Shown here piece after piece: positions 16,388-57,253 of a stretch of DNA of 64,000 bases (positions within the stretch are counted from its first letter, which is position 1; every line of letters starts with the position of its first letter). The position numbers and the translations under genes are program-made. Source of the stretch: Blepharisma stoltei ATCC 30299 (Eukaryota > Protista > Ciliophora). The DNA lies in the NCBI GenBank assembly GCA_965603825.1, contig CBFDEM010000004.1:62001-126000 (forward strand), written 5' to 3'. The notes beneath the pieces are model-generated. The model ran no database searches. It had not been told where the DNA came from and worked only from the letters and a program-made list of their open reading frames with translations.

Positions 16388-19300
16388 TTATTTACTAGGG
16401 ATAATTTTCAATATCGCATTGATTTTCTGCATATATTTTTTTTCATTTCTGAAAAACAGCAAATAAAATCCAAAATAAGCCACAAACGAGCACATAATGA
16501 AGCTAATAAGTGAGATTGTTATTATTTTCATTTGGTCATCAATGACACTTTGCGAGTATTTATCAATTTCATCTATAGCGCTGGTATAAAACTCATCTAT
16601 ATGCTGAAGGTTATCCATAAAATCAACCCAAAATTGCGGATTTGAATTTCCGTATGCGAGAGTATATATATCAAATCTTCATAATTCTTGAGCTGCATAT
16701 ACCCCAAGATCAAAATATGGGCAAACTCCATTATTATTTTCATAAAAAAGCCTTCTAAAATTATCTGACAAAATTGATGAAAACTTAGAATTTCTTAAGG
16801 CTAATTTTTTATTCTCAATGCTAATAATTGTGGAGTTTATTATGGGTGTGCTGCGAGAAAAAGGGGTTGCAAAAGGGAACTGGAGTCATAATCCAAGACC
16901 ATATGTTTCGCCAGACATTTGCTGTCCCCAAACAGCTGCAGTAGTATACAGAATCTGATTTTGTATTAAATCTTTTAATACTTCTGGCCTATCCATTAAA
17001 TATTGTGAGCATTCTTCATAAAGATAAGTCGTGTTTATCAAGCAAAACAATATAACAGCGGCTAGATATGCAAGTATTCTCCACGAATACCTCCAATAGC
17101 TTTTAAAAATATAAGGTTCCATTGAGGGGTTTTGATAAGAAAAAAGGTTTTCAGACTTAGCATGGACTTCTTTGAGTCTTTCCAAAATTGTTTGTTTAAG
17201 CTCAGAATAGCTATTAAAAGCATTTTTTCTTATATTATTTCAAAGTATATTTTCAATCTTAAAAATCGAGTAATAAAACGGGAGTATCATCAAAATGCAT
17301 GCAATAAGTACCGCAGGGCCTAATATTAGTAGAATAATCATTTGAGATTTAAATTCAATCATCATTGACTCTTGGCATTCTATGATATCAATTAATGATT
17401 GATTACAATAGTCGAGCGCCACTCCCCACCCATTAAGCAGCAAAAATCTGTACACGCTTCAAGGATTTTCTGATGGATCTGCCAGTTTCCTTTCAAATTC
17501 ATTTCCCTGAATATATTTTACATTTTTTATAAACATTGAAATTGTATCTATTAAATTTGCTTTTTCCCTTGCGGTTCAATCTTCTGTGCTTCATAAATTC
17601 ATTTTGTCTTCACCTAAAATACTTTGGCTGGAACAGGCATTTCAATTTCTGGAATTTGATATTATGCTGGAATAAACAGTCTCCAGTTCTGACAGAGCTT
17701 GTACATATTTTTCAACTGAAGCTATTATTAATAAATCGCCATTTTCAATCTGAAGTGATGGGACTATCAGCAAAATTTGTGCATAAAGTGCAATTCTTTG
17801 AAAATTTTTCCCAGCTTTTCCAATGTTAACCAGAAGATTCATATCACTTATAAATTTTATATCGGCAAAGGCATAGGCCAAAACCGCGATATTTACTGCT
17901 AAAACAGTTATAATCTGAATAAAAATTACAGAAAAAACAAAAGCGAGGTGTAAAATATTGATGGACCTAGCTGATGAATGTACCATATTGAGGAACTTGT
18001 GCTGGATAGCAGTGACTGATACTTGGGATTTTGCGTCCTGCTGGTCTGATGAATTTTTTGCATCTTCATCAGTAAAAAGATTCATTTTCGAGTCCAAGTC
18101 TTCATCTCGCTGATTTTCTTTATGATAAGAGCTGATTGTACGAAAAGTGTCACATTCTGCAAAATTTACTGATAATTTATTGGTAGCGACCTCTAGCTTT
18201 TCTTGGTCATTTTGTGCAGGTTTATTTGAATTTTGCCATTTAAATATTTCTTCACTGTCATTTATTAGGATAATATATGGAATTTTTATGTTATAAATTT
18301 CATATAATGATAGAATGAGCAAATATTCACCAAAATTTTGCTTTATATGATAAGGAAAATCCAGTTTTCATTCAAAATTTTCTGATTTAAAAAATAATTT
18401 TTTAAGCTTGCACCCTATTAAATTTTCATCAGATTTTCTTAAAATTTTCGCAAAATTTCTTGAATAACGAATTATTTCTCCAGACTCAGAAACTAATGCA
18501 AATTGATGCGAATTTTCTTTTGGCTTAAAGACAAGTATAGCTACAAGTAGGCTATTTATTGAGGTTGCTCATAATTTTCCTGTACAGTCTAATAAGTTGT
18601 TGCGGACTGTTAAAAAAAATCCCTGGCTTAAATCGATTTCTGATACTGAGCTGAACTGAATAAATTGTTTGGATTTTTCTCTGACTCTTTCTTTATAATA
18701 AGGATCAATAAAATTAAAAAAATTGTCACTAGCTATGTTTTTTAAAGGGAGCTTAAAAATTTCTGAAGATTTTGGGTTTGCAAACAGAATTTCTCCAAAA
18801 TTGCTTGGTTCATTAGAAATTACGAGAACCCCATTATTATCATTAAAATAGCTGAAATTGCTAGAATTATTGATAGGGTTTGACTGAGATCTTTCAATTG
18901 CCCTCAGCTTTACCTCAATTAAATTTGATTTTTCATACTCATAAGTGATATCTTTAGTATATGAAACATATAGAGCCAAAGATTCTCTAGAATTCGGGAA
19001 TTTAGTAAAAATCTGATGGTAATTTGAATTTAATTCAGAAATTTCGTTATTTATTCTGGATAAACTTTTTTTCAATTTAGTAAGATCAGGCTTAGTAGAT
19101 GTAATCTCATTTCAAAAATTAAATAAATTTATGCACAATTTTTGGTCTGCTTTTTTTATTGTGTGGAATTGTAAAAAATAATTTGAAAACTGAGAGCTTT
19201 GAGAAGCACAAGCTTCTAAGATATTTTTGTGGCATAAATACTCTTGATAATTAGATTCTAAGCCTGAATCAGGAATATACTTTGTTTTAGCAAGCTTAAT

Positions 19301-20560
19301 TTTGGCTAAAGATTCATCCTGTAAGGTAAAATAGCAGTAATTTGCAGCTCATATAGCTTGAAGTTTGTTTCCATTTAGCCTTTTTTCTATAAAGAAATTC
19401 TCAAATATCTTAATTATTTCATCCTTATGTGCAGTACTATTTGAGCACAATTCGTGTCTAATTGATTTTTCTAAATCATATTGGGAATTTATTTTATTCA
19501 AGTTTTCAGGTATGTCTTTATTTGGTTTTGTTTGTAACTTGATAGAAAATTGAATGATAAATACAGAAGACAAAGGTCCCAATATAATTAATAGGAGGGA
19601 AATAGCTAATGAGTTGTCCATAAGGCGCCCCAAAATAAAAATAAAGGAGAATAAAGCAATAAAACATAGTCTAAGAATAATAACTGTATTGCAAAATATC
19701 GAAAAATAAGGTAAAAGGTTTGCAGTTTCTTTGAGTAAAATCATTGAAAAAAAAATCGCTAAAATTTGTAAATAAATTATATGATCTTTAGCGAATAATG
19801 CAAAAGCAATTGGAAAAATATAAGTAAAAATTGCTATATGAGTATCAATCCTTGAATGTGCCTTTGCATTCAAATTTTTCTCTATAGCAGAATGCCTTAT
19901 TTCAGCCGAAAATTCTGTATAAAATAAATACAATATAAACCCAAATATCAATAGAAAAATAATTGTAATTTTTCATATAGAGCCGACTTCAAAATCAGCT
20001 AGCTGCTTTCCATCTTCATATTCTGAAATTTTATTTTGAGACAAAAAATTATACTTGAAGAAAAGCGAGAAAATCTCAATCGACGGAATTAAAAAAAAAA
20101 TCGATCATAAATAAAAAAGATAATATAAAATAGTAAAGACTTGAGATGGCAAGCTGTAAGAGTAATAAATAGCTATGACCAAAATAATAACACTTGTAAA
20201 GCTTGCATAAGTAAAGGAAAGTAATATAAAAAAGCACTCATCAATTATTCCTAATGCTGAGCAGGTATTATCAATTTTTATGTGTCCTATGACTTCTCAT
20301 ATGATCATATTATTTTTTCAATTAGTAATAGGCATATCAGGGACATATAGTAAGCTAATAACTTGAAGGCATCATATCGTACCCTCAATCGCTATTATCA
20401 GTTTTTGTCTTGTAACAGAATCTTCTTGATTTCTAGTCCTATTAAAGAGCCTGCAATAAAATTCAAAAATTGAGTCCTTGATTGATTTTTCTTTTTTAAA
20501 TTTTCAGAGATTTTGCCTTGAGTCTTGATTTTTGCGTGATTCAGCTTTAGGTTCAGCCAT
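16388..20560 (-). CDS. Copy C: TmcB/TmcC-like PAS membrane protein (~1380 aa)
   Basis: ATG 20560 (MAEPKAESRKNQDSRQNLW), TAA 16388. Introns 17915-17929 (GTAATTTTTATTCAG) and 17507-17521 (GTAAAATATATTCAG), both stop-free. Length consistent with one frame. Confidence 0.9.
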
Positions 20561-20746
20561 AAATGAAATATAAGATGATTAACTTGCATATTATCAAAAA
20601 TCTAAGTATTTATCATCACAACTATAAGTAATTTTAATTTAATTTGAATAGCGATAATTTTTCAATGTTGAAACAAATAAATAATTTATTGAAATTTACT
20701 GAATGTAATTATTTTTTTATTTGAACTTTTCAAAGAAAACATATAT

Positions 20747-21047
20747 TTATGGTATTGACCATTTTTGAATAAACGTGCCCATGCCTTTCTTTAACCCAGC
20801 AGCTTTTTCCTGCGCTAGCTGGTCCTCATATTCAAAGATTTTCCAACTGGTTCAAATTTTCATGAGATGGCAAATATTCCCTTCCTTTGGTTTCTGAAGA
20901 TCTTCTAGGCTTCTCCACTCTTCCACGTAAGTCTTTTTTGCCTGATTCAGAAATTCGCTTATTTTCTTTTTTCTTCAATTCCTTGGATCTTGTCTGGAAA
21001 GTTTCGTCAATATAGTTGCTGATAAGTAAATTAACTGCAGAGGACAT
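20747..21047 (-). pseudogene. Small hypothetical protein (~100 aa), apparently with one frameshift
   Basis: MSSAVNLLISNYIDETFQ..., then the alternative frame reads KISEFLNQAKKTYVEEWRSLEDLQKP...EYEDQLAQEKAAGLKKGMGTFIQKWSIP-stop. GC is higher than in the flanks; unrelated to the array family. Confidence 0.35.
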
Positions 21048-21464
21048 TATAATTTTTTGGATATGCAAGAAAAATAAAAATTATTTTGATTGAGAATGTG
21101 TTGCTGAGGTATTTTATGAGAAATTGCCAAATTTGATAAAGCTGAGAAGAAGAAATGCTAAAATATGGGGAAAATGATGATGCAATCATCTAGAAACTAT
21201 TTATATGCTAAGATTTTTCTAATAGCTATGCCTCAAGTGGGGAGTTATAAATTTGAAGCATATATAGCGAATCAATTTTTCAAAATTTCTCTATTAGCCC
21301 ACAATTCTATTTATAATAGAAAATTCAGATTTAATAATTAACTATTAGTCCTGAGAATTTATTTTTTGCAAATATATGCTCTCAAGAACCCCAGGTGTAT
21401 ATTTATGTTTAAATATTTAACTAAAATTTATGCCATAAAAAGGCTTAATATATTATGTTTTACC

Positions 21465-22567
21465 TTATTTCGGCATAACCTCTTTGTTGAGTAAACTGAA
21501 TTTGACGACCATATTATTTAAAACAGTAAGATATTTTTTTCATTTTTGTAAAAAGGTAAATAAAATCAAATATAAGCTACAAATGAACATAAAATAAAGC
21601 CAGTTAGCGAAAATGCAATAATATTTATTTGGTTGTTAATCACACTTTTTGAGTAATCGTCAATTTCAGTTACAGCGCTATTATAAAAATCAACGATATG
21701 CAGGGTATTTAATGTAAAAGTTAGTATATCAAAAGGAGCAGAAATCGTAAACGCTTAGTATACATATATTATGAAATTATCAGCAAGTACAGCATAGAAA
21801 ACCTGTAAAAATATGTAAAAACAGCTATATGAGTATCAGAATGTGAGTGCGCTTTAGCAATTATTGCCATTTTATATAGGGAATGTCTAATTTCTCCGGA
21901 AAACTGCGTATTTAACAAAATAAGAGCAAATGCAAATATCATTGAAAATATCACCCAAATTTGCCATGATAAATTAACCTCAGAGTCTTTAGAATTGTGA
22001 TTTTGGTATTCTGCAATTTTATTCTGAGGTGAAAGGTTAATAGAGGGTATAAAAAAATAATTTCCATAAGTTAAAAATACTATTGAAAATGTTCAATATA
22101 AAGCTTGGTATGCTATAAGAATAATAAATTATATCAATAAAAGCAATAATAATCAAAAAATTAGTGCAGGTAAATAAAATTGATAAAATCAGATATAGGA
22201 ATTGCCCGAGGATGGCGCAAGATAGCGCCATCCTCAGGCAATTGCTATATTCGCTAATAATCCCTAATTTTGAGCAAACATTGTCAAAGTTTAAGTAGCC
22301 TATAATCTCCCATATAGTCATATTTTTATTTCAATTGCTAATCGGCATATCTGGAAGTCACAGGAAGTTTATTATTGGAGGCATCATATAATACCTTCAA
22401 CTGTTGCTTTACCTTTTTGCCAAGGCATAGAATTTCTTTACTATTGGCTTTACTGTAGAGCTGGCAATAAACCTCGAAAATTGCATTTTTAACTGAGTTT
22501 CTGCTAGGGATTTTCCAAAAATTGTGGGAATTGCCATTTTGATAAGAATCGTTTTAGCTTCAGTCAT
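21465..22567 (-). pseudogene. Copy D: internally deleted, frameshifted family pseudogene (N-terminal TM part fused to the last ~80 codons)
   Basis: ATG 22567 with several frameshifts. WEIIGYLNFDNVCSKLG and FSGEIRHS...KAHS motifs, then at ~21715 it jumps to HIVDFYNSAVTEIDDYSKSVINNQ...KNEK...VMPK-TAA(21465). Confidence 0.85.
22194..22249. mobile_element. 54-bp TA-bounded palindromic insertion (candidate mini-MITE/IES), copy 1
   Basis: TATAG GAATTG CCCGAGGATGGCGC AAGATA GCGCCATCCTCAGG CAATTG CTATA: 25-bp stem with 2 mismatches and a 6-nt loop. Removing 54 bp and leaving one TA restores ISEYLILSI, collinear with paralogs. Confidence 0.8.
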
Positions 22568-23347
22568 AAATGAAATATATTAAAAAATAAAAGAGCATTT
22601 AAATGAAATATATATATATTATAAGCAAGCCCATCAAAGTTGCATATTAATAAATTCACAAAAAAACATTATAAAAAGTTTAACTTCTCAGACTTTAACT
22701 TTTTATTATCAGTATCATTATTTCTAATTGCCTTCACATTAATTATAATTAAAACTAGTCACTTAATTGGAAAATTAGTTATGGTTAACTAATAATTCGG
22801 AGGTATGATGACCTTTTTGCTATTTCTGAGATAGAATTTTCTTTACTCCTGGCTATATAATGGGCTCAAATTACAGTTTTTTCCTTTTTGCTTGCAATTA
22901 TGGTGAAGATAGTTCGGGCATTTCTCTTTAGCTATAAATAGAAATATTTAAAATCTAAAAAATATTAAATCAGTATTCTAAACAATATATGTAAAAAATG
23001 AAAATTATAATTAAGATTTCCAAAAGTTTTATAAGGAGACATTATTTTAATAGACCATTTATTAAGCTTCTACTCAATAAAGAGATTATAATGCCAACTC
23101 TAGAATTCTTTAGTTAAGATGTATGATATAAAGTTTACGAGGTCTTAATAATTAAACAAAACCTTATTCTTAGATTTTCGTTATTTTTGTTAAAGATCTC
23201 TATTGTTATTTATTAAGGACAATCATTAAATTAAATTTATATTTTGTAAATATACCATCTTAAAAAAATTAAAATTATTTCTTAAACAAATGATGTTAGC
23301 TTTTTTCTTAAGAATTAATTAGAATAATATTTAATATTAAATAATAG

Positions 23348-23930
23348 TTATTGAATTCCAAATTTCATATAGTCATTTGGAATTTCTTGGTCTTTTTCAT
23401 ATAAGAGATTTTTAAAATTTTTAGATAGGAGGTCTGGAGTGATTACTTAGTTTTTCTTAAGTCTAAGGTTGTACTCTCAATACTTAGCAGAATTTCGTCA
23501 ATCTTTGCTTTTGCTTTATAAAAAGGGCACATGTAGTACACCTGAGCGCATATTGGATAATTCAAATTATCTGTAAAAGACTGAATTTTTCATATTACTA
23601 AGTTAGTGTACAATATTTGCGCATGAATTAAATTTCTTATGACCTCAGGCCTATTTGATAGATATTCTGCACATTGATCATAAAGATAAAAGATATTTAT
23701 AAAGCAAAATGAAGAAAACCCTATAAACGATATAAGCATTATTCAAAAATACCGCCAATAACTTTTTAAAGTGCATGGCGTTTTATAAGATTTTTTATGA
23801 GAAAATGCAATATTCTCCTCAGAATGAAAATCCTTTAATCTATATAAAATTGTGTTTTTGAGCTTAAAAAAAGAGCCATACACATTTTTTCTGACATTGC
23901 TCCAAACATCATTTTCTATTTAAAGAAAAA
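23348..23930 (-). pseudogene. Orphan internal/3' fragment of another family copy
   Basis: Reads IENDVWSNVRKN...KSYWRYFWI...INIFYLYDQCAEYLSNRPEVIRNLIHAQILY...LLSKNFKNLLYEKD...MKFG with stops and frameshifts; it has no 5' part. Confidence 0.8.
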
Positions 23931-24029
23931 TAAATCTATAGCTTCTCTATGATCTCAATTCCCTATTTATGGTAATTTTGAATAATCATATCTCTAAAGA
24001 TTAAAATGTTAAATTTACTTTAAAAATAT

Positions 24030-27000
24030 TTAATGCGGCATGATCCTCATTACTGAATTTATTTTTTGTAAATATTTCTTTTCTCTTTTAAAAAACCTCA
24101 AATACAGCCCAAGATACATGAAAATTGAAATTATGATAAAGACGACCAGAACAATAAAAATAATATTCATCTGGTCATCAATTTTGCTTTGTGAATATTT
24201 ATCAATCTCATCAGTAAGAACATCAAAACTATCAGACGATTTTCCTAAAGTTATTAATCAATTCAGCCACAATTGAAAACCCGGGTAAGAATAAACGATA
24301 AAATACGAATCAAATTCTAAAATATTTTGGCCTGTATTTTTTCCATAAATAAAAACATCAGACAAAGCTACATTGCCATTTTCAAAATATTCATTTTTAA
24401 AATCATCTGATAAAATAGAAGAATATTTAGGCTGCCTTAAATGAGTTTTAAAAAGGCTGATTTTTGTTATGGTCTCTTGTCACACACTTTCACTATTGCT
24501 AAAAGGAATAATATTAACTAAAGCATTTGAGGCTAATAGCATATTATCTGAAAAAGCTTTAATCGTTCATACCCCTAAGCCAGTGTATACGATTTGCCCA
24601 TTTATTAGATCTCTTATTATTTCAGGTCTTTTAGATAAATAATCTGTGCATTTTTCGTAGAAATAAGTTATGTTTATGATAGAAAACGTAGAAACTAGTA
24701 AAAAATATAATGAAATTCTTCAGAGATATTTTCAATAAATATTGAATTTGTATTTTTTCTTTGTAGGACGAGCGTTATCAAGCATAATTTCAGGCTCGTA
24801 ATGGACTGTTGTAAGCCTTTCAATACTCAGCTGTGTGAGCTCAAAATAGCAGTTAAAAGTTTTGTCTCTTATATTGTTCCACAGGTTATTTTCAATTTTA
24901 ATTGTAGAATAGCAGAAAGGAATCATGCAGCAAACACATATAGCAAGCACAGCAACCCCCAAAATCAAAAAAATCAGCATTTTTGTCTTAAAATCGTCCA
25001 TGATATCCTTTTGGCATGATATAATATCATACATCGACTGATTGCTAAATTGAAAAGCTTCCCCAAAACCATTTAACTCCACAAATGACACTTCTTTAGA
25101 TATATCTTCTGAGCTGTTTAATTTTTGTAAAATTGCGTTTCCCTACATAAAATTTACATATCGAATAAACTGAGAAATCGCATTTAATAAATTTGATTTT
25201 TTCTTATAAGGCTCCCCTTCAATTTCCCATATAGAAATATGCTCATCAGTAAAAGTGCTAAGTCCTGAGCAATAGTCCCATTTATCTAATTCTTGTGTAA
25301 TATTTAAATAAAGACTTTCCACAGACATTACTTTACCAGCCAAGCCAGGGGTCATTATTTTGACAATTTGGGCTGCAAAAGGAGTCCCACTAGACGCAAC
25401 AAGGAAAATTGTGTGTGCAATAAACCCAGTAGCTTGTAAAAGTTTTGCTGTTTTTCCGACAGCTACAGGGAGATCCATATTGCTTACATAGTCTACATTA
25501 TAAATAGCATAAAATAAAACTCCTATATTTGTAGCAATAACAGATAAAATCTATATAAAGGTTACTGAAATAATAAAAGCTATATGCAAAATATTTATCG
25601 ACCTTGACGAGATTCCTATCATTTTAAAAAATCTGTATTTTGGGGAGCCTTGAGAAATTATTGATTTTTCGTCTTCTATTTTTTCTGATAAAAAGTTCTC
25701 GATGGCGTCTAAAGAATTATGAGAAATCGAGTCTTTGTGGGGGTCTAAGTTTGTTTCAGTGTCATAAATATTGTGATCTGCGATGTTTATCTCTTCATCT
25801 TCGAATGCTTTAAATAAGCTTATTTCCATTTCATTGCTTTTTGATAGGTCTTCTTCATGGCTACTGTGATGAATAAAGCCTTTTCATTTTAAAATTTCTT
25901 TAGGATCATTTATTAATAACAAGTAATAGATTTTAAACACGTGATAATCTTTATATGCTTGGACTACATACGCTCCTTTCTGAAAAGCTGGCACTGGATA
26001 AGGGACAAAATCCTGTAAATCTATGCTTTCTAGGTCAGAGAAAAGATTTTTAATAAAAAGTCCTTGCAAATCGTAACAAGTTCTGCAGGGTTTAAAGAAA
26101 TTTATGCTGTGGCAAAAAATTTCCCCATTTTCCATTATTAAAGCAATTTCGTGATTTGCAAGAATAGGCTTGAATGTCATAGACGTGACCAGGAAATTAT
26201 TAATTGAAGTAAGGTAGCATATTGCTGTGCATTCTGTTAAAATATTTGCAGGAGATATCAAAAATAGCCCTTCAGTAAGGTCTATTTCTGAGCTTGAGCC
26301 AAAATTACTCACATAATTGGCATTTTCTTTAATTTTTGTATGGTAAATTGAAGGTAGAAAATTAAGTAGGTTATTGCCAATAATAGAATGAAGAGGACAT
26401 TGTACGACTTCCCCAAATTTTTTATTTGCAAAAAATATTTCACCGAAATCGTCTTCTTCAGCTGAAGAAATCAAAATGCCATTAACTCCACTAAAATAGC
26501 TGAAATTAGAATAATCATAAGCTGCATTCCCAGCAATTTTATCAAAAGACCTTAATTTAGCTTCAAGAAGAACTGATTTTTCCATATCAAAATAAATGTT
26601 TTTTAAATATGTTGCATAAAGAGCTATAGACTCTCGTGATTTAAAAAATTTTGTAGTAAGCTGATGATAAGCTGTGTTTAAATAGGAAATCTCATGATGG
26701 ATATAGCCTAAGCCTTGGATTATTTTAGGGAGATCTGGCGTTAATGAAGTAATTTCTTCCCAAAAAGTCAATAAATTTCAGCATAGCGTTTTGTCTTCTT
26801 TTTTTATCCAATTTAAATGCTGCAAATAATTGATAAATTGTTCACATTCTGATTTATTTATTTCTAATATATTTTTATTGCATAAATATTCTTGATATTT
26901 CCCTTCAAGACTCCAGTCTGAAACTTTTTTGACTTGGCTTAACTTAATTTTAGCCAAAGATTCATCTTTTAGTGCAAAAATACAATAATTTGCAATCCAA

Positions 27001-37100: not shown

Positions 37101-38309
37101 GAGGACTTGAAGCTTGTCACGATATAAGTATTTTTCTATGAAAAAAAGCTCGAAGAGGTAGATTATTTGGTCTTTATTTTCAGAGTCATTTCATAATAAA
37201 GAATGCCTAAGACATTTTTCTAATTTATATACAGAATTTATTCCAGATAAGCTAGCCGGTAGATTCGTTATAATTTTGCTTTGTAATTTTAAGATATATT
37301 GGTAAATGAACACAGATATCAATGGGCCTAAGATAATCGCTATTAAAATAACTAATAACGAATTATCCATTCAATTCCCTATAATAAATCCAAAAGATAC
37401 TACTGAAATAGCAAAAAATCGAAGAATCAGTGTCAAATTGCAATAGGCTGAAAAATATGGCAGAAATATTATAGTTTCTGCCATCATAATTATTGAGCTA
37501 ACCATCAAAAAGCATTGATAATAAATTATATAATCCTTTACGCTTAATACATAAAGAATTGGGGAAAAGTATGCGAAAATTGATATTTGGAAATCAATTT
37601 TCGAATGAGCCTTTGATTTCAGTATTTTTTTACTTACAGAATGCCTAATTTCACCTGAAAATTCAGTGTACAATAAAATCAAAGGAAAAGTAATAATTAT
37701 CGCAAAAATTATAGAAATTTCTAAAGCAAAATTAACCTCAAAGATCTTAGATTCATCATTGTTCGTGTACTCAGATATATTTTTTAAAGATGTAAAATTA
37801 TATTTCAAAACGACAGAATATAGCACCATAGAAGATATAAAAATCAAATTTACCCAGAACCTGAAAATCCACTTAAATAGGACAACGATAAATCTCGGTA
37901 TGCTCACCGAACGGTGAACCATAAAAACTAAAATCAATATACCTGAAAATATTATAAAATTAGCTACAATTGACAAGTATAAATATGCATCAATAATTCC
38001 TAGTTCCGAGCATATATTGTCAATTCTTAAATACCCAATAATTTCTCATAAAATCATATTATCGCTCCAATCTTTAATTGGGAGGTCTGGAAACCATAAT
38101 AAACTCATTATTTGAAAGCATCAGATTATATCTTCGATTGCTTTGCTAACTTTTTGTCTTAACATAGATATTTCTTCGTCTGCTTTATTGTGATAAAGCT
38201 GATTATAAAGTTCAAAAATCGACTGTTTGATTGTTTTTTGCTTTTTTCTTTTTCACAATCCTTTGCTGGAAGCAGATAATTGATCTATTTCAACTTCAAA
38301 GTCAAGCAT
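34149..38309 (-). CDS. Copy G: TmcB/TmcC-like PAS membrane protein (~1376 aa)
   Basis: ATG 38309 (MLDFEVEIDQ); ends CCG TGA TAA. Introns 35661-35675 (GTATTTTTTATATAG) and 35265-35279 (GTAAGGGATATTCAG). Confidence 0.88.
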
Positions 38310-43556: not shown

Positions 43557-46500
43557 TTAAGGAATAATTTTCATAATTGAATTGATTTTTCGCAAATAAT
43601 GTTTTTCTTTCCTAAAAAACTGAAAATATAGTAAAAAATAAATAAACCCTGAGCTCATAGCAAAAACCACAAAAGCCATTGTTATAATTTTGACTTGATC
43701 TTCAATTACACTTTGTGAATACCCATCAATCTCAATAGAAAAATCACGATAAGTTCTAGCCGATTCTTCAAGATTCACAATTCAAAATAATCAAAAATTG
43801 GTGTCTAAATTTGAATAAGTAACAGAGTAACTATCAAAATTTATGATATCTTCAGCGGCAAATGCCCCATAATCAAAATAATATCAATTTGGATCATTTT
43901 CTTGTTCAAAGAAGAGCCTTTTAAATTTTTCTGATAAAATAGGCAAATATTTATGATCCCTCAAAATCAGTCTTGAGCGTTCAACATTTTTTATGTAATT
44001 TTGAAATGTAGGCAAACTATTGACCAAAAAATACTCATTAGGAATATAATTTGCTAATGGCAATCCTCAACGCTCCAATTGAGAATTTGTTGACGCTATG
44101 GCTATTAAGTTTAAAAAAAATTGTCCACGTATAAGCTCTTTAATTATTTCTGGTCTATATGATAAATAATCTGTGCATTTTTTGTAGAGATAAGCTATAT
44201 TTATAATAGAAAACAGTGCAACGACTATAAAATATACAAAGATTCTTCAAATGTATTTTCAGTAATTTTTATAGGTAAAACTCTTATTTGAAGGATTATT
44301 TTTGCTAATTGAAATTTCATTTTGAGAATGAATGCATTTTAGTCTGTCGATTAAGGACTGTTTTAGCTCAAAATAATGCTCATATACGTTTGTCCTTAGA
44401 TTGTTTCAAAGATCACTTTCTATTTTGACAGTAGAATACCAAAATGGTATCATTATGCAAACACATAAGCCAAGAACACCAATCCCCAACATAAGAAAAA
44501 TGAAAATTTGGTCTTTGAAGCCAGACATTATTATTTTTTGGCATTCGATAATTTCAAATAAAGAACTATTGCAGTATGCAAATACTTTTCCATAACTATT
44601 AGCTGTTAAAAATAATGCTTCAGCATCATAATTTTCTGAATTGTTATACTTTCTAACAAATTCATTTCCCTAAATAATTTTTACCGTTTGTAAAAACTCT
44701 GAAATCATATCTAATAAGTTTATTTTCTTATCAGAATTCCATAGCTTTATATTGTCCTCCATAAATATTTCTTTCCCAGAACAATAATTTCACTCTTCTA
44801 CATGAGAAGTAGCATAAAGATATAGACCTTTTAATTCAATCATATAATTGATAATTTTATATCACCCTACTTTTAATATTTGCTCAACTTCAGAAGTTGC
44901 TATAGGTGTAAGCGCCCAAAGAATATGAGTAGCAAAGCCAACATTATGGATTTTATTCCCTATTTTCCCAAGGGAGATAGGGATGTCCATATTTCGTATA
45001 AAATTTATATTAGAGAAGGTATAAAATAGAACTGCAATATTTGTGCCTAGAACAGCGACAATCTATATAAAAAATACTGCTAAAATGATGGCAGCATGCA
45101 AAATATTTATTGACCTTGCCGATGTAGCTATCTGTTTATGATTTCTCAGCTGACGAGCATTTTCTGAGACCTGGGATTTTTCTTCAGAAAAAGCACGGTC
45201 AGTTCCTTGAGGTGTTTCAATTGAGAAATCTTGGTTTAAATTCATTTCAGAATTTGCATAAATATCCTCTATATCTGGATATTCTTTGTAACAAATTTAG
45301 GGAAATTTTCAGAATATCCACAAATTTCTCCAGTTTCTGATATCAATATAACTTGATGCTTGCGTTTTTTAGGCTTAAAAAGCAATATCGACATAAGATA
45401 ATTTTTATGAGAAGTTATCAAGATTTTCCCAGAGCATTCTAAAAGATAATGAGAAGGATCATTTAAAAAAAATCCTCCACTTAAATCAATTTCAGAATTA
45501 GAGGCAAAGTGGATTATTCTACGAATATCTTCATTTAAATCTTCTATATAATAAGAAGGAATAAGGCTTGCTATATTGGTCCCATCAATATTATGATTCG
45601 GAGATTTCAGGATTTCACTGGATTTTGGGTTTGAAAAAAGAATTTCTCCAAAATTTTCTTCTTCACATGAAATAACAAAAATTCCATAAATTTCATTAAA
45701 AAATTCTAAATTTTTTGAAAATGATTTTTTAGCAGTTTTACTTAACAATTGTGACTTATTTTCTAATAAGTTTGATTTTTCTCGGTCAAAAAGAATGCTT
45801 TTAGTATATGAAGCATAAAGGTCTAAAGACTCCTTGGAGTTGCAGAATTTTGTGGTCAACTGGGTAAATTTATTATCTACTATTAATAATTTTTTGTCTA
45901 TCCATAAAAGATTTTTTGAGAGTTTTACAGTATCAGGTCTTAATGAAACTACTTCTTCTCAAAATTTCAATAAATTGATGCATAATTTTAAATCTTTCTT
46001 TTTTATCATATGAAATTCTTGAAAGTATTCAATAAACTGCTTGCTTTCACTTGATAAAGATTCAATTCTTTTACTACATAAGTATTCTTGGAAATCATTT
46101 TCCAAATTTCCTGAAATATTTTTGGTTTTGCTTAACTTAATTTTAGATAGAGACTCGTCTTTTAGCGTGAATATGCAATAGTTTGTTACCCAGATAACCT
46201 GAAGCTTGTCTCGGGATAAGGAATTTTCAATGAAAAAAGTTTCGAAGAGGTAAATTATTTGATTTTTCTGCTCAGGATCATTTAATATTAGTGAATGTCT
46301 AATAACTTTTTCTAATTTATATGCAGAAATAATAGCAGATAAAGTAGTTGGAAGCCTCATAATCATATTTCTTTGCATTTTCAATACAAATTGATAAATT
46401 AGCGCAGCTGCTAATCGTCCGAAGACTATTGTATTTAAAAGTATTAATAGAGAATTGTCCATTCAGTTCCCTAAAATAAATCCAAAAGACACTAAAGAAA

Positions 46501-47455
46501 TAGCAAAAAGTCTAAGAATTAGTGTCAAATTACAATAGACCGAAAAATAAGGCCAAAAAATTAGAGATTCTATGGTCAAAATAATTGAAATAACCATCAA
46601 AAGACATTGATAATAAATAATGTAATCTTTATCAAATAACACGTAAAATATTGGGGAAAAATATGATAGCATTGCTATATGCAAATTAATTTTCGAGTGA
46701 GCCTTTGATATAAGTATTTTTTTACTTACTGAGTGCCTAATTTCACCTGAAAATTGAGTATGGAATAAAATCAATGGAAAATTAACAATCATTGCACAAA
46801 TTATTAAAATTTGTATAGTAATATTTGCCTCAAAACTTGCCGGCTCATTATTGTGCTCATATTCAGTAATTCTTTCTGCAGGCGTAAAGCTATATTTCAA
46901 AAAGATGGAATACAATACCAAAGATGGTATAAAAATCAAATTTGCCCAGAAATTGAAAATCCATTTTAATAGCAAAAAGACTCATCTTGGCAAATTAGCT
47001 GAACGATAAATCATAAAACTCAAAGTAAATATTCCAAAAAATAATACAAAATTAACCACAATTGATAAATATAAGTATAGCGCTTTCCCGAGGATGGCGC
47101 GGAATGGCGCCATCCTCGGGAAAGCGCTATATGCATCAATAATCCCAAATTCTGAGCATATATTGTCAATTCTAAAGTATCCAATAATTTCTCAAATCTC
47201 TATATTGTTTTTTCAATCTTTTATTGGAAGATTTGGAATTCATAGTAGGCTCATTATTTGAAAGCACCAAACCAAGTCTTCAATCTCTTTTCCAACCTTT
47301 TGCCAAAGCAGTGATATTTCTTCATTAGTTCCATTATGATAAAGTTGGCAGTAAAACTCAAAAACTGATTCTTTAATCGTTTTTAGCTTTTTATTCTTTC
47401 ATAATCATTGGCAGGAACCATATGATTGATTTATCCCAGCTTCAGGTATAGACAT
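43557..47455 (-). pseudogene. Copy I: family gene with a ~310-bp frameshifting internal deletion and a 54-bp palindromic insertion
   Basis: ATG 47455, TAA 43557. Introns 45063-45077 and 44670-44684. FPKFVTKN is fused out of frame to YPDIEDIYANSEM at 45280, giving TAG at 45269; span is not divisible by 3. Confidence 0.85.
47076..47131. mobile_element. 54-bp TA-bounded palindromic insertion (candidate mini-MITE/IES), copy 2
   Basis: TATAG CGCTTT CCCGAGGATGGCGC GGAATG GCGCCATCCTCGGG AAAGCG CTATA: perfect 25-bp stem, 6-nt loop, 33/56 GC. Removal restores IDAYLYLSI, the same peptide as the empty site in copy G (~37970-37995). Confidence 0.85.
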
Positions 47456-56000: not shown

Positions 56001-57253
56001 AATGATTTGTCTTTTAGTGTAAATAAACAATAATTTGTAGCTCAGGCAACTTGAAGCTTGTCTCCATGGAAAAAGTGTTCTGTAAAGAAGGTTTCAAATA
56101 GATAAATAATATGATCTTTATGCTCTATGTCGTTGCCACACAAAAAATTTCTCAAAGATTTTTCTAGCTGATACTGAGAATTTATTCCTGCCAAGCCTGC
56201 TGGAGGATTGCTTGAGGTGCTATTTAATTTGAGTTTCCGAGTGTATTGAATCACAAATAAAGCTGATAATGGGCCTAAAACAATTGCTGATAAAATCGTA
56301 AATAGGGCATTATCCATTATTATACCCAAAATAAATCCAAATGATATTACAATAATAATAAAAAGCTGGAGAATCAGTATAAAATTGCAATAAAATGAAA
56401 AATATGGTAAAAGCTTCATAATTTCAAAAATTATAATTATTGAAAAAGCCATCATAGCAATTTGAAAATAAATCATATAATCATCATCAAACAATATATA
56501 AAATATTGACGAAAAATATGTGAAAAACGCTATATGAGCATCAATTTTTGAATGTGCTTTTGATTTTACTATTTTACTGCTCACAGAATGTCTTATTTCG
56601 CCTGAAAATTCAGCATGAAAAATAATTAAAGGAAAATTTATAATTATTGAAAGTATGATCAAAAGTTTTAAAATAAAGGTAATCTTAAAATCTGATGTAT
56701 CGCTGCTATTTTCGTACTCAGTAGCATTATAGTCTGACAGAAAGTTGTATTTCAGAAAAATGGTAAATAAAACCACTGAAGGGATAAAAAATATTGCTAT
56801 TCATATATTTAAAAATCATTTAAGTGCAATAAATAATATTTTTGGCAAACTCACAGATCGATGATAGTCAGCAATTGTACACACAAGAATAGTTAATGAA
56901 ATCATTAAAGTAATTGAAATCGCTAGATATAAGTATTCATAAAAATTTCCGAATGCTGAGCAAATATTGTCAAGCCTTATGTATCCAACAATTTTTCATA
57001 ATGTCATATAGTCTTTTCAATCTGTAATTGGGAGATTTGGGGTTCACATTAGGCTTGCCATTTGAAGACTCCAAATTATGCTATGAATTGCCCTTTCAAC
57101 TTTTTGCCAATTGTCAGATCTTTCTTCCATAGCCTTATTGTGATAAATTTGGCTATATACCTCAAATATTGAAGCTTTTATACTCCTCCTTTCTTTTTTA
57201 GCTCAAAAGCCTTTATTTGAAGACTCCATAAATTCACCTTCATATGTAAGCAT
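53084..57253 (-). CDS. Copy K: TmcB/TmcC-like PAS membrane protein (~1379 aa)
   Basis: ATG 57253 (MLTYEGEFME), TAG 53084 (MKIIP*). Introns 54596-54610 (GTATTTTTTAAATAG) and 54197-54211 (GTAATTTTTATGTAG). Confidence 0.9.

What the first reader, a model, noticed from the sequence alone, without database searches (positions are those of the whole stretch)
22194..22249. GC-rich 54-bp hairpin element inserted in frame at a TA in copy D
Seen: TATAG-N6-CCCGAGGATGGCGC-N6 loop-GCGCCATCCTC(A)GG-N6'-CTATA, flanked by a duplicated TA, 3n long and stop-free (adds 18 codons, YSNCLRMALSCAILGQFL). It has the same length, core and homologous codon as the element at 47076, but different outer arms and loop. 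Two stem mismatches suggest an older, decaying copy.
Basis: seen in the sequence. Interest (0 to 1): 0.8.

Follow-up and report, generated by a model that had tools for sequence, protein, structure and literature searches.

The report
Tiny palindromic transposon in a pseudogene
This hairpin is one of at least 54 tiny palindromic jumping-DNA insertions that stay in the working (somatic) genome of the ciliate Blepharisma; this copy sits in an already broken gene, so it adds nothing to a protein, but a second, different copy landed independently on the same codon of a distant sister gene.

Summary
The hairpin is real: 25-bp arms, 6-nt loop, duplicated TA, +54 bp against paralogs. Both junctions lie in public DNA contigs without differences; no 54-nt skip was listed. 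The genome matches Blepharisma stoltei's somatic genome (inferred). The element belongs to a family of at least 54 dispersed copies, five subfamilies, all 53-54 bp, depleted from open frames (7/44). Its ends resemble published IES ends, but it is shorter than the smallest IES class (64-66 bp). A germline-type library holds far more of the core, plus a longer relative absent from the assembly. Best reading: a non-autonomous TA-targeting mini-MITE too short to be excised.
Two first-reader inferences fail. The host is a pseudogene that stops at codon 53, before the insert, and 3n length is not a family rule. The copy is young, 1 nt from another copy that shares one 'mismatch'. Confirmed and unexplained: the 47076 element (another subfamily) hit the same codon in a paralog of a different clade; rough chance 0.001-0.01. 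The scan found this family before on other DNA.

The parts
22194..22249 (.). Mini palindromic element, subfamily B, with both TA copies (54-bp insertion)
22194..22218 (.). Left arm (25 nt); end fits the published TAT-AG-NNN-TTT IES end at 7 of 8 fixed positions
22219..22224 (.). 6-nt loop, subfamily-B type
22225..22249 (.). Right arm (25 nt); 22244 mismatch shared with copies L018 and L028, 22236 mismatch also seen in L017
22211..22232 (.). Central hairpin core GATGGCGC-N5/6-GCGCCATC, conserved in all five subfamilies
21764..22567 (-). Host copy D: truncated, frameshifted pseudogene of a TmcB-like/PAS membrane-protein family (about 60 paralogs); stop at codon 53
47076..47131 (.). Sister element, subfamily A (one of 9 identical copies), at the homologous codon of copy I
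43557..47455 (-). Host copy I (ends approximate); has a deletion of about 305 nt with frameshift near 45285 relative to copy G, so probably also defective
37984..37985 (-). Empty homologous TA in copy G, a close relative of copy I
56934..56935 (-). Empty homologous TA in copy K
21307..21324 (.). 18-nt stretch at which run X5 carries about 547 extra bases absent from the assembly; marks X5 as a germline-type library
   Evidence: table 8 (record 17)

Best explanation
A young copy of a non-autonomous, cut-and-paste mini-transposon (mini-MITE) of Blepharisma stoltei. Shown: it inserts at TA and duplicates it; it occurs at 54 or more unrelated sites; it is present in somatic-type and germline-type DNA at this site; copies avoid open frames. 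Inferred: a Tc1/mariner-type (TA-targeting) transposase moves it in the germline; it is the minimal form (IES-like ends plus conserved central hairpin) of longer palindromic germline elements; at 53-54 bp it is below the smallest class the IES excisase removes (64-66 bp), so it passes into the soma and survives mainly in intergenic DNA and redundant or dead paralogs such as copy D. The D and I insertions are independent hits on one codon, probably a favoured target within a tolerant gene array; why that TA is favoured is not shown.
For: Copy number and dispersal: 33 exact core matches against 0 in the control, 45 with diverged copies, 9 more in two further subfamilies. Nine identical subfamily-A copies and arm asymmetries shared among unlinked B copies indicate copying as a unit. 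TA duplication against empty paralogs. 7 of 44 sites in long open frames, against 33% of TA sites elsewhere in the same loci and 74% in 8 other loci; true IESs are about 70% intragenic. Arm ends match TAT-AG-NNN-TTT at 7-8 of 8 positions in 64 of 88 arms (consensus). IES classes start at 64-66 bp. No depth drop or 54-nt skip listed. Summed depth on the core relative to single copy: about 80x in X2, about 2,800x in X5; loose ends at 22199-22200 in X5 and X12 show a longer repeat sharing the core, not found in the assembly. D and I lie in different well-supported clades; one clade rejected, p-AU 7.75e-45.
Against: No autonomous partner or transposase was found; the arms do not resemble the published Bogo or BstTc1 terminal repeats. 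The centre is better conserved than the subterminal arms, unusual for a MITE. All read data are contigs: rare excision is invisible and summed depth is not a copy number. The length of the longer relative was not determined. The measured target preference is weak (leave-one-out median percentile 0.84; D site 0.99, I site 0.79) and does not by itself explain the double hit.
Confidence: 0.7

Rival explanations
1. Each short copy arose in place by collapse of a longer palindromic germline element (for example a 153- or 228-bp MITIES) that had inserted at that TA; the short form itself does not move.
For: A longer germline-type repeat shares the central core (table 7; absent from the assembly). 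Long palindromes are deletion-prone (general knowledge). Changes on both arms occur (5 pairs), so arm-to-arm correction could make a collapse symmetric.
Against: Nine identical A copies and one narrow length across five subfamilies need many identical collapses. The germline-type contig at this site already has short arms (records 17, 18). X5 has many more different flanks joined exactly at the terminal TA than X2 (78 against 14 among rows shown), as expected if the short form is itself abundant.
Confidence: 0.12
2. An ordinary short IES that is partly excised and was kept in the assembly.
For: TA ends that resemble IES ends; the authors describe retention as a continuum; contigs cannot show rare excision.
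Against: No skip and even depth in X2 (122.5 and 132.1 on the two sides); strong depletion from open frames, the opposite of IESs; no IES class below 64 bp.
Confidence: 0.07
3. The same-codon pair reflects one insertion spread by ectopic gene conversion or homing between paralogs, with later replacement of the element.
For: Chance of a second copy at a homologous TA is small (3.5e-5 to 2.6e-4 per site before corrections). D's three closest paralogs have TGC, not TA, at the codon.
Against: The two elements differ at 12 of 56 positions and each has near-identical kin elsewhere. D's flanks stay closer to its own relatives than to I (15 nt upstream: 0.93 to L055, 0.73 to I), so no conversion tract is visible.
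Confidence: 0.07
4. A host cis-acting hairpin or a selected 18-residue peptide insert.
For: Conserved GC-rich centre; three A copies lie in frame in long open frames.
Against: This host is dead and not seen in RNA; sites share no position relative to genes; 53-bp subfamilies and stop-introducing copies exist; no Rfam match.
Confidence: 0.03
5. Library adapter or assembly artefact.
For: Hairpin shape, GC-rich in an AT-rich genome.
Against: Present in DNA runs of two studies and in a diverged strain-like run; five subfamilies; precise TA duplication. It does not resemble common adapters (from memory, not tested against a vector library).
Confidence: 0.01

Closest known systems
Blepharisma MITIES: BogoMITE and the palindromic IES families rnd-1_family-87 (about 153 bp) and rnd-1_family-160 (about 228 bp) (Seah et al., PMC9942856; bioRxiv 10.1101/2022.05.02.489906)
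   Same: Non-coding, palindromic, repeated, TA-bounded; ends fit the consensus given for the 153/174-bp classes; a longer germline relative shares the core.
   Different: 53-54 bp, below all IES classes; kept in the soma; depleted from genes. Not mentioned in the main texts or supplements searched. Identity of the longer relative with a named family could not be tested.
Stowaway-type (Tc1/mariner-derived) MITEs (own knowledge)
   Same: TA duplication, inverted repeats, no coding, uniform length, bursts of near-identical copies.
   Different: Shorter than typical; arms meet at a 5-6-nt loop; centre more conserved than subterminal arms; no partner transposase found.
Paramecium mobile IESs such as FAM_2183, FAM_78, FAM_670 (Sellis et al., PMC8354472)
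   Same: Short non-autonomous TA-bounded mobile families (32-765 bp); two same-site FAM_2183 insertions among 1,973 were noted as unexpected.
   Different: Those are excised and mostly intragenic, and their same-site cases were nested in IESs; here the copies stay in the soma and the same-site pair lies in paralogous coding sequence.
Rickettsia palindromic elements (own knowledge; one search gave only general papers)
   Same: Palindromes that can sit in frame in genes.
   Different: Bacterial, longer, found in expressed proteins; this copy is in a pseudogene and the family avoids open frames.

Membership tests
MITE (Tc1/mariner type) | Terminal inverted repeats | tested here: met
   25-bp arms
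MITE (Tc1/mariner type) | TA target-site duplication against an empty site | tested here: met
   +54 bp against 15 paralogs; empty TA in copies G and K. No empty allele of D itself was seen.
MITE (Tc1/mariner type) | Short, non-coding, uniform length, many dispersed copies | tested here: met
   At least 54 copies of 51-54 bp; flanks non-homologous except D/I among the 45 fetched
MITE (Tc1/mariner type) | Autonomous element with the same ends | tested here: inconclusive
MITE (Tc1/mariner type) | Presence/absence polymorphism or shown transposition | tested here: inconclusive
   Run X12 contigs break at 22256 and do not span the site
IES / MITIES of Blepharisma | TA-bounded, IES-like ends | tested here: met
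   64 of 88 arms match 7-8 of 8 consensus positions
IES / MITIES of Blepharisma | Germline-limited: excised from the somatic genome | tested here: not met
   In the somatic assembly and in X2 contigs at full depth; no 54-nt skip listed. Rare excision not excluded.
IES / MITIES of Blepharisma | Length within IES classes (64 bp and up) | tested here: not met
   54 bp; smallest class 64-66
IES / MITIES of Blepharisma | Mostly intragenic (about 70%) | tested here: not met
   7 of 44 in long open frames
Introner / spliceosomal intron | GT...AG ends; host introns are 15-16 nt | tested here: not met
   Ends are TA...TA; the gene family's real introns are 15-nt GTA...TAG
In-frame palindromic peptide inserts (RPE-like) | Translated within an intact protein | tested here: not met
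   Host stops at codon 53; no RNA contig. Open for copies L010 and L032.

The most novel reading that the evidence does not exclude
The 53-54-bp unit (IES-like ends plus an invariant central hairpin at a fixed distance) is the minimal mobile core of Blepharisma's palindromic germline elements. It moves by a mechanism that reads the central hairpin, possibly using the host's own excisase or a domesticated transposase, and re-inserts at favoured TA cut sites, which would explain two subfamilies on one codon and three subfamilies within 50 kb. It would be a mobile element that escapes DNA elimination by size.
Probability: 0.2. Interest if true: 0.8.

Novelty: new variant of a known kind. Interest (0 to 1): 0.52.

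Why it matters
If right, the family marks the lower size limit of programmed DNA elimination in Blepharisma with natural substrates: IES-like ends, but 10 bp (one helical turn) shorter than the smallest excised class. It shows the cost of not being excised (purged from genes, unlike IESs), which bears on the debate over whether elimination shields mobile DNA from selection. It also offers a simple test of the looped-excisase model: short against long versions of one element. This particular copy has no effect on a protein; its own value is the independent same-codon hit, which points to a target preference.

Tried and rejected
Exact core pattern in metagenome, prokaryotic-genome and viral collections: 0 hits each. 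Rfam: only a chance match outside the element. Two patterns for the longer relative in the assembly: 0 hits at up to 3 mismatches. A loose arm pattern was too unspecific. TATA (4-bp) duplication rejected: it would give +52, and the alignments show +54. Shared descent of the D and I inserts rejected by the tree. An ancestral TA-bounded IES at this codon is unlikely: 11 of 16 paralogs have TGC/TGT. '228 = 54 + a 174-bp IES in the loop TA' was considered: subfamily A has no TA in its loop, and no loose ends at the loop were among the rows shown; not strictly excluded for this copy, since no X5 contig shown spans 22220-22221. A paralog 88% like D seen in X2 is most likely the C64 copy (L055/L056), not an empty allele of D. 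State of the site in the second strain-like run (X12) could not be read. Literature search for same-site MITE insertions in paralogs gave nothing relevant.

Full report
Source. The window's genome has 41,464,486 bases in 64 contigs. Its genes read through TGA as tryptophan and carry 15-nt GTA...TAG introns. This matches the published somatic (MAC) genome of Blepharisma stoltei ATCC 30299: 41 Mb, UGA = Trp, 15-16-nt introns (PMC9942806). The name is inferred; the tools do not give it.

Observation. The element at 22194-22249 is as described: two 25-nt arms, a 6-nt loop, TA at both ends and two unpaired positions. It folds at -26.6 kcal/mol, z -6.85. Against 15 paralogs it is exactly 54 bp extra, so the duplicated target is TA. 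The 18 codons are stop-free in the historical frame. Contigs of run X2 cover 19900-22221 and 22214-25400 without differences, at depth 122.5 and 132.1; contigs of run X5 cover 21307-22219 and 22222-22630 without differences. No joint skipping 54 nt is listed for any run; two joints were not shown and contigs drop rare variants.

Family. The core occurs 33 times exactly, against 0 for the control. Looser searches gave 45 copies, and two further subfamilies added nine: at least 54. Subfamily A has nine identical copies, among them 47076. Subfamily B (about 32, including this copy) varies mainly at arm positions 5-6. Subfamilies C, D and E have a 5-nt loop and are 53 bp. All keep TATA ends and the centre GATGGCGC-N5/6-GCGCCATC at the same distance, while the subterminal arms differ. 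Five pairs change on both sides, which suggests arm-to-arm correction; the rows are related, so this is not proof of a folded structure. The exact core was not found in metagenome, prokaryotic or viral collections and is not in Rfam.

Age of this copy. It differs by one base from C43:542802 (L018) and by two from C56:61871 (L028); all three share the G.G mismatch. The other mismatch recurs in L017. In X5 the contig on the right starts at 22222, three flank bases out, which suggests that other molecules share this right arm with both mismatches (inference from k-mer branching). Fourteen of 37 full-length copies have two mismatches. The copy is young and not decayed.

Host gene. The window is a tandem array of a membrane-protein family with weak TmcB (26.2 bits, cut-off 27) and PAS matches, about 60 copies genome-wide. 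Copy D is a 5' fragment of about 280 codons with at least five frameshifts; from its ATG at 22567 the frame stops at codon 53, before the insert. No contig of the putative RNA run X8 lies on 21188-24315, while the neighbours are covered (one shallow run, so weak evidence). The added codons are therefore not translated from the native start. Across the family, only 7 of 44 sites lie in long open frames, against 33% of other TA sites in the same loci and 74% in eight unrelated loci. Of those 7, three are in frame without a stop and four introduce a stop. Depletion from genes is what selection should do to an insert that is not removed from the soma; real IESs are about 70% intragenic.

Relation to IESs. 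The arm ends match the consensus published for the 153- and 174-bp IES classes at 7-8 of 8 positions in 64 of 88 arms. The smallest IES class is 64-66 bp, and the authors propose that the excisase cannot work on very short loops. 53-54 bp is about one helical turn below that class. Run X5 behaves as a germline library: one contig carries about 547 extra bases at 21307-21324 and runs on into the left arm of the element (record 17). So the germline allele has the short arm too. Summed depth at 22216 is about 80 single-copy equivalents in X2 and about 2,800 in X5; overlap of short contigs can inflate this up to about 31-fold, so it indicates more copies, probably hundreds, not a number. Loose ends at 22199-22200 in X5 and X12 show a conserved sequence in place of the terminal five bases: a longer repeat shares the centre. 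It was not found in the assembly. The papers describe palindromic IES families of about 153 and 228 bp as possible MITIES but do not mention this short somatic form in the texts searched.

The same-codon pair. The D and I inserts interrupt the same codon. It is TGC/TGT in 11 of 16 paralogs, TCC in one, and TAY in D, I, G and K; G and K are empty. D and I fall on opposite sides of well-supported branches, and holding them together is rejected (p-AU 7.75e-45). Each element has near-identical kin elsewhere, and D's flanks show no conversion tract from I. Two independent insertions are the simplest reading. With about 3.7 million TA sites and 3-22 homologous TAs, the raw chance is 3.5e-5 to 2.6e-4. 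Allowing for the weak T-rich preference around the target, for exclusion from intact genes, and for having looked at all copies raises this to roughly 0.001-0.01 (my estimate). Copy I has a deletion of about 305 nt with a frameshift, so both hosts are probably dispensable. A third subfamily (E) sits about 2 kb before the window (C4:59928), so three subfamilies lie within 50 kb. Pairs within 35 kb are mildly in excess genome-wide (5 against 1.67, P 0.03). A favoured site in a tolerant array is likely; its cause is not shown. A precedent is two same-site FAM_2183 copies among 1,973 in Paramecium (PMC8354472).

Mechanism. Shown: TA duplication, dispersal, presence in both genome types at this site, depletion from genes, a longer germline-type relative. 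Inferred: germline transposition by a TA-targeting transposase acting in trans; failure of excision because of size; survival where selection is weak. Not found: the transposase. It works like a Tc1/mariner-type MITE and meets the structural tests for one. It is not an IES or MITIES, since excision, length and gene distribution were tested and not met.

Verdict. A real, young copy of a mini-MITE family that appears undescribed in the literature searched and that this scan has already reported from other DNA. The independent same-codon insertion is what this locus adds. New variant of a known kind; interest 0.52.

Noticed in passing
window 21307-21324: Run X5 carries about 547 extra bases here, bounded by an 18-nt overlap: a germline-limited insert with an unusually long direct repeat (IES or retroelement-type duplication).
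   Followed up: partly
window 45281-45287 (copy I): Deletion of about 305 nt with frameshift relative to copy G; the host of the 47076 element is probably defective too.
   Followed up: partly
window 12573, 25551, 31139, 35661, 40316, 45063, 54596, 59106 and 12159, 25143, 30731, 44670, 48817, 54197, 58707: Two 15-nt GTA...TAG introns conserved in position across the array; they look like in-frame stops. Copy C (16388-20578) has one unbroken 1,396-codon frame.
   Followed up: partly
G000:C4:59928-59948: A subfamily-E palindrome (53 bp) about 2 kb before the window, upstream of another paralog of the same array; a B copy (L037) lies about 350 nt upstream of a paralog on C46.
   Followed up: partly
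G000:C6:294305, C15:86423, C17:110061, C18:267946, C20:818975, C35:599277, C43:325871: Subfamily D: seven 53-bp copies with the same centre and loop; flanks not read.
   Followed up: partly
L010:1487-1542 and L032:1487-1542: Subfamily-A copies in frame inside long open frames (at least 465+496 and 192+496 codons): candidates for a translated 18-residue insert.
   Followed up: partly
L015, L020, L022, L027 (each 1487-1542): Copies that put a stop into a long open frame: genes broken in the soma unless the element is removed.
   Followed up: partly
G000:C22:103368 and 105693: An A copy and a B copy only 2.3 kb apart.
   Followed up: no
window 22256-23094, run X12: The likely ortholog of D in the diverged run lacks the 22374 frameshift and four nearby changes, so part of D's decay may postdate the strain split; X12 also has at least five contigs with a right-arm variant seen once in the assembly.
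   Followed up: partly
G000:C4:135496-135603: A paralog whose match to the query stops at residue 37, near the homologous codon; possibly truncated or interrupted. Could not be fetched.
   Followed up: no
window 20709-21080 (-): A small ORF (123 codons, code 4) between copies C and D, covered by an RNA-type contig (20736-21042).
   Followed up: no
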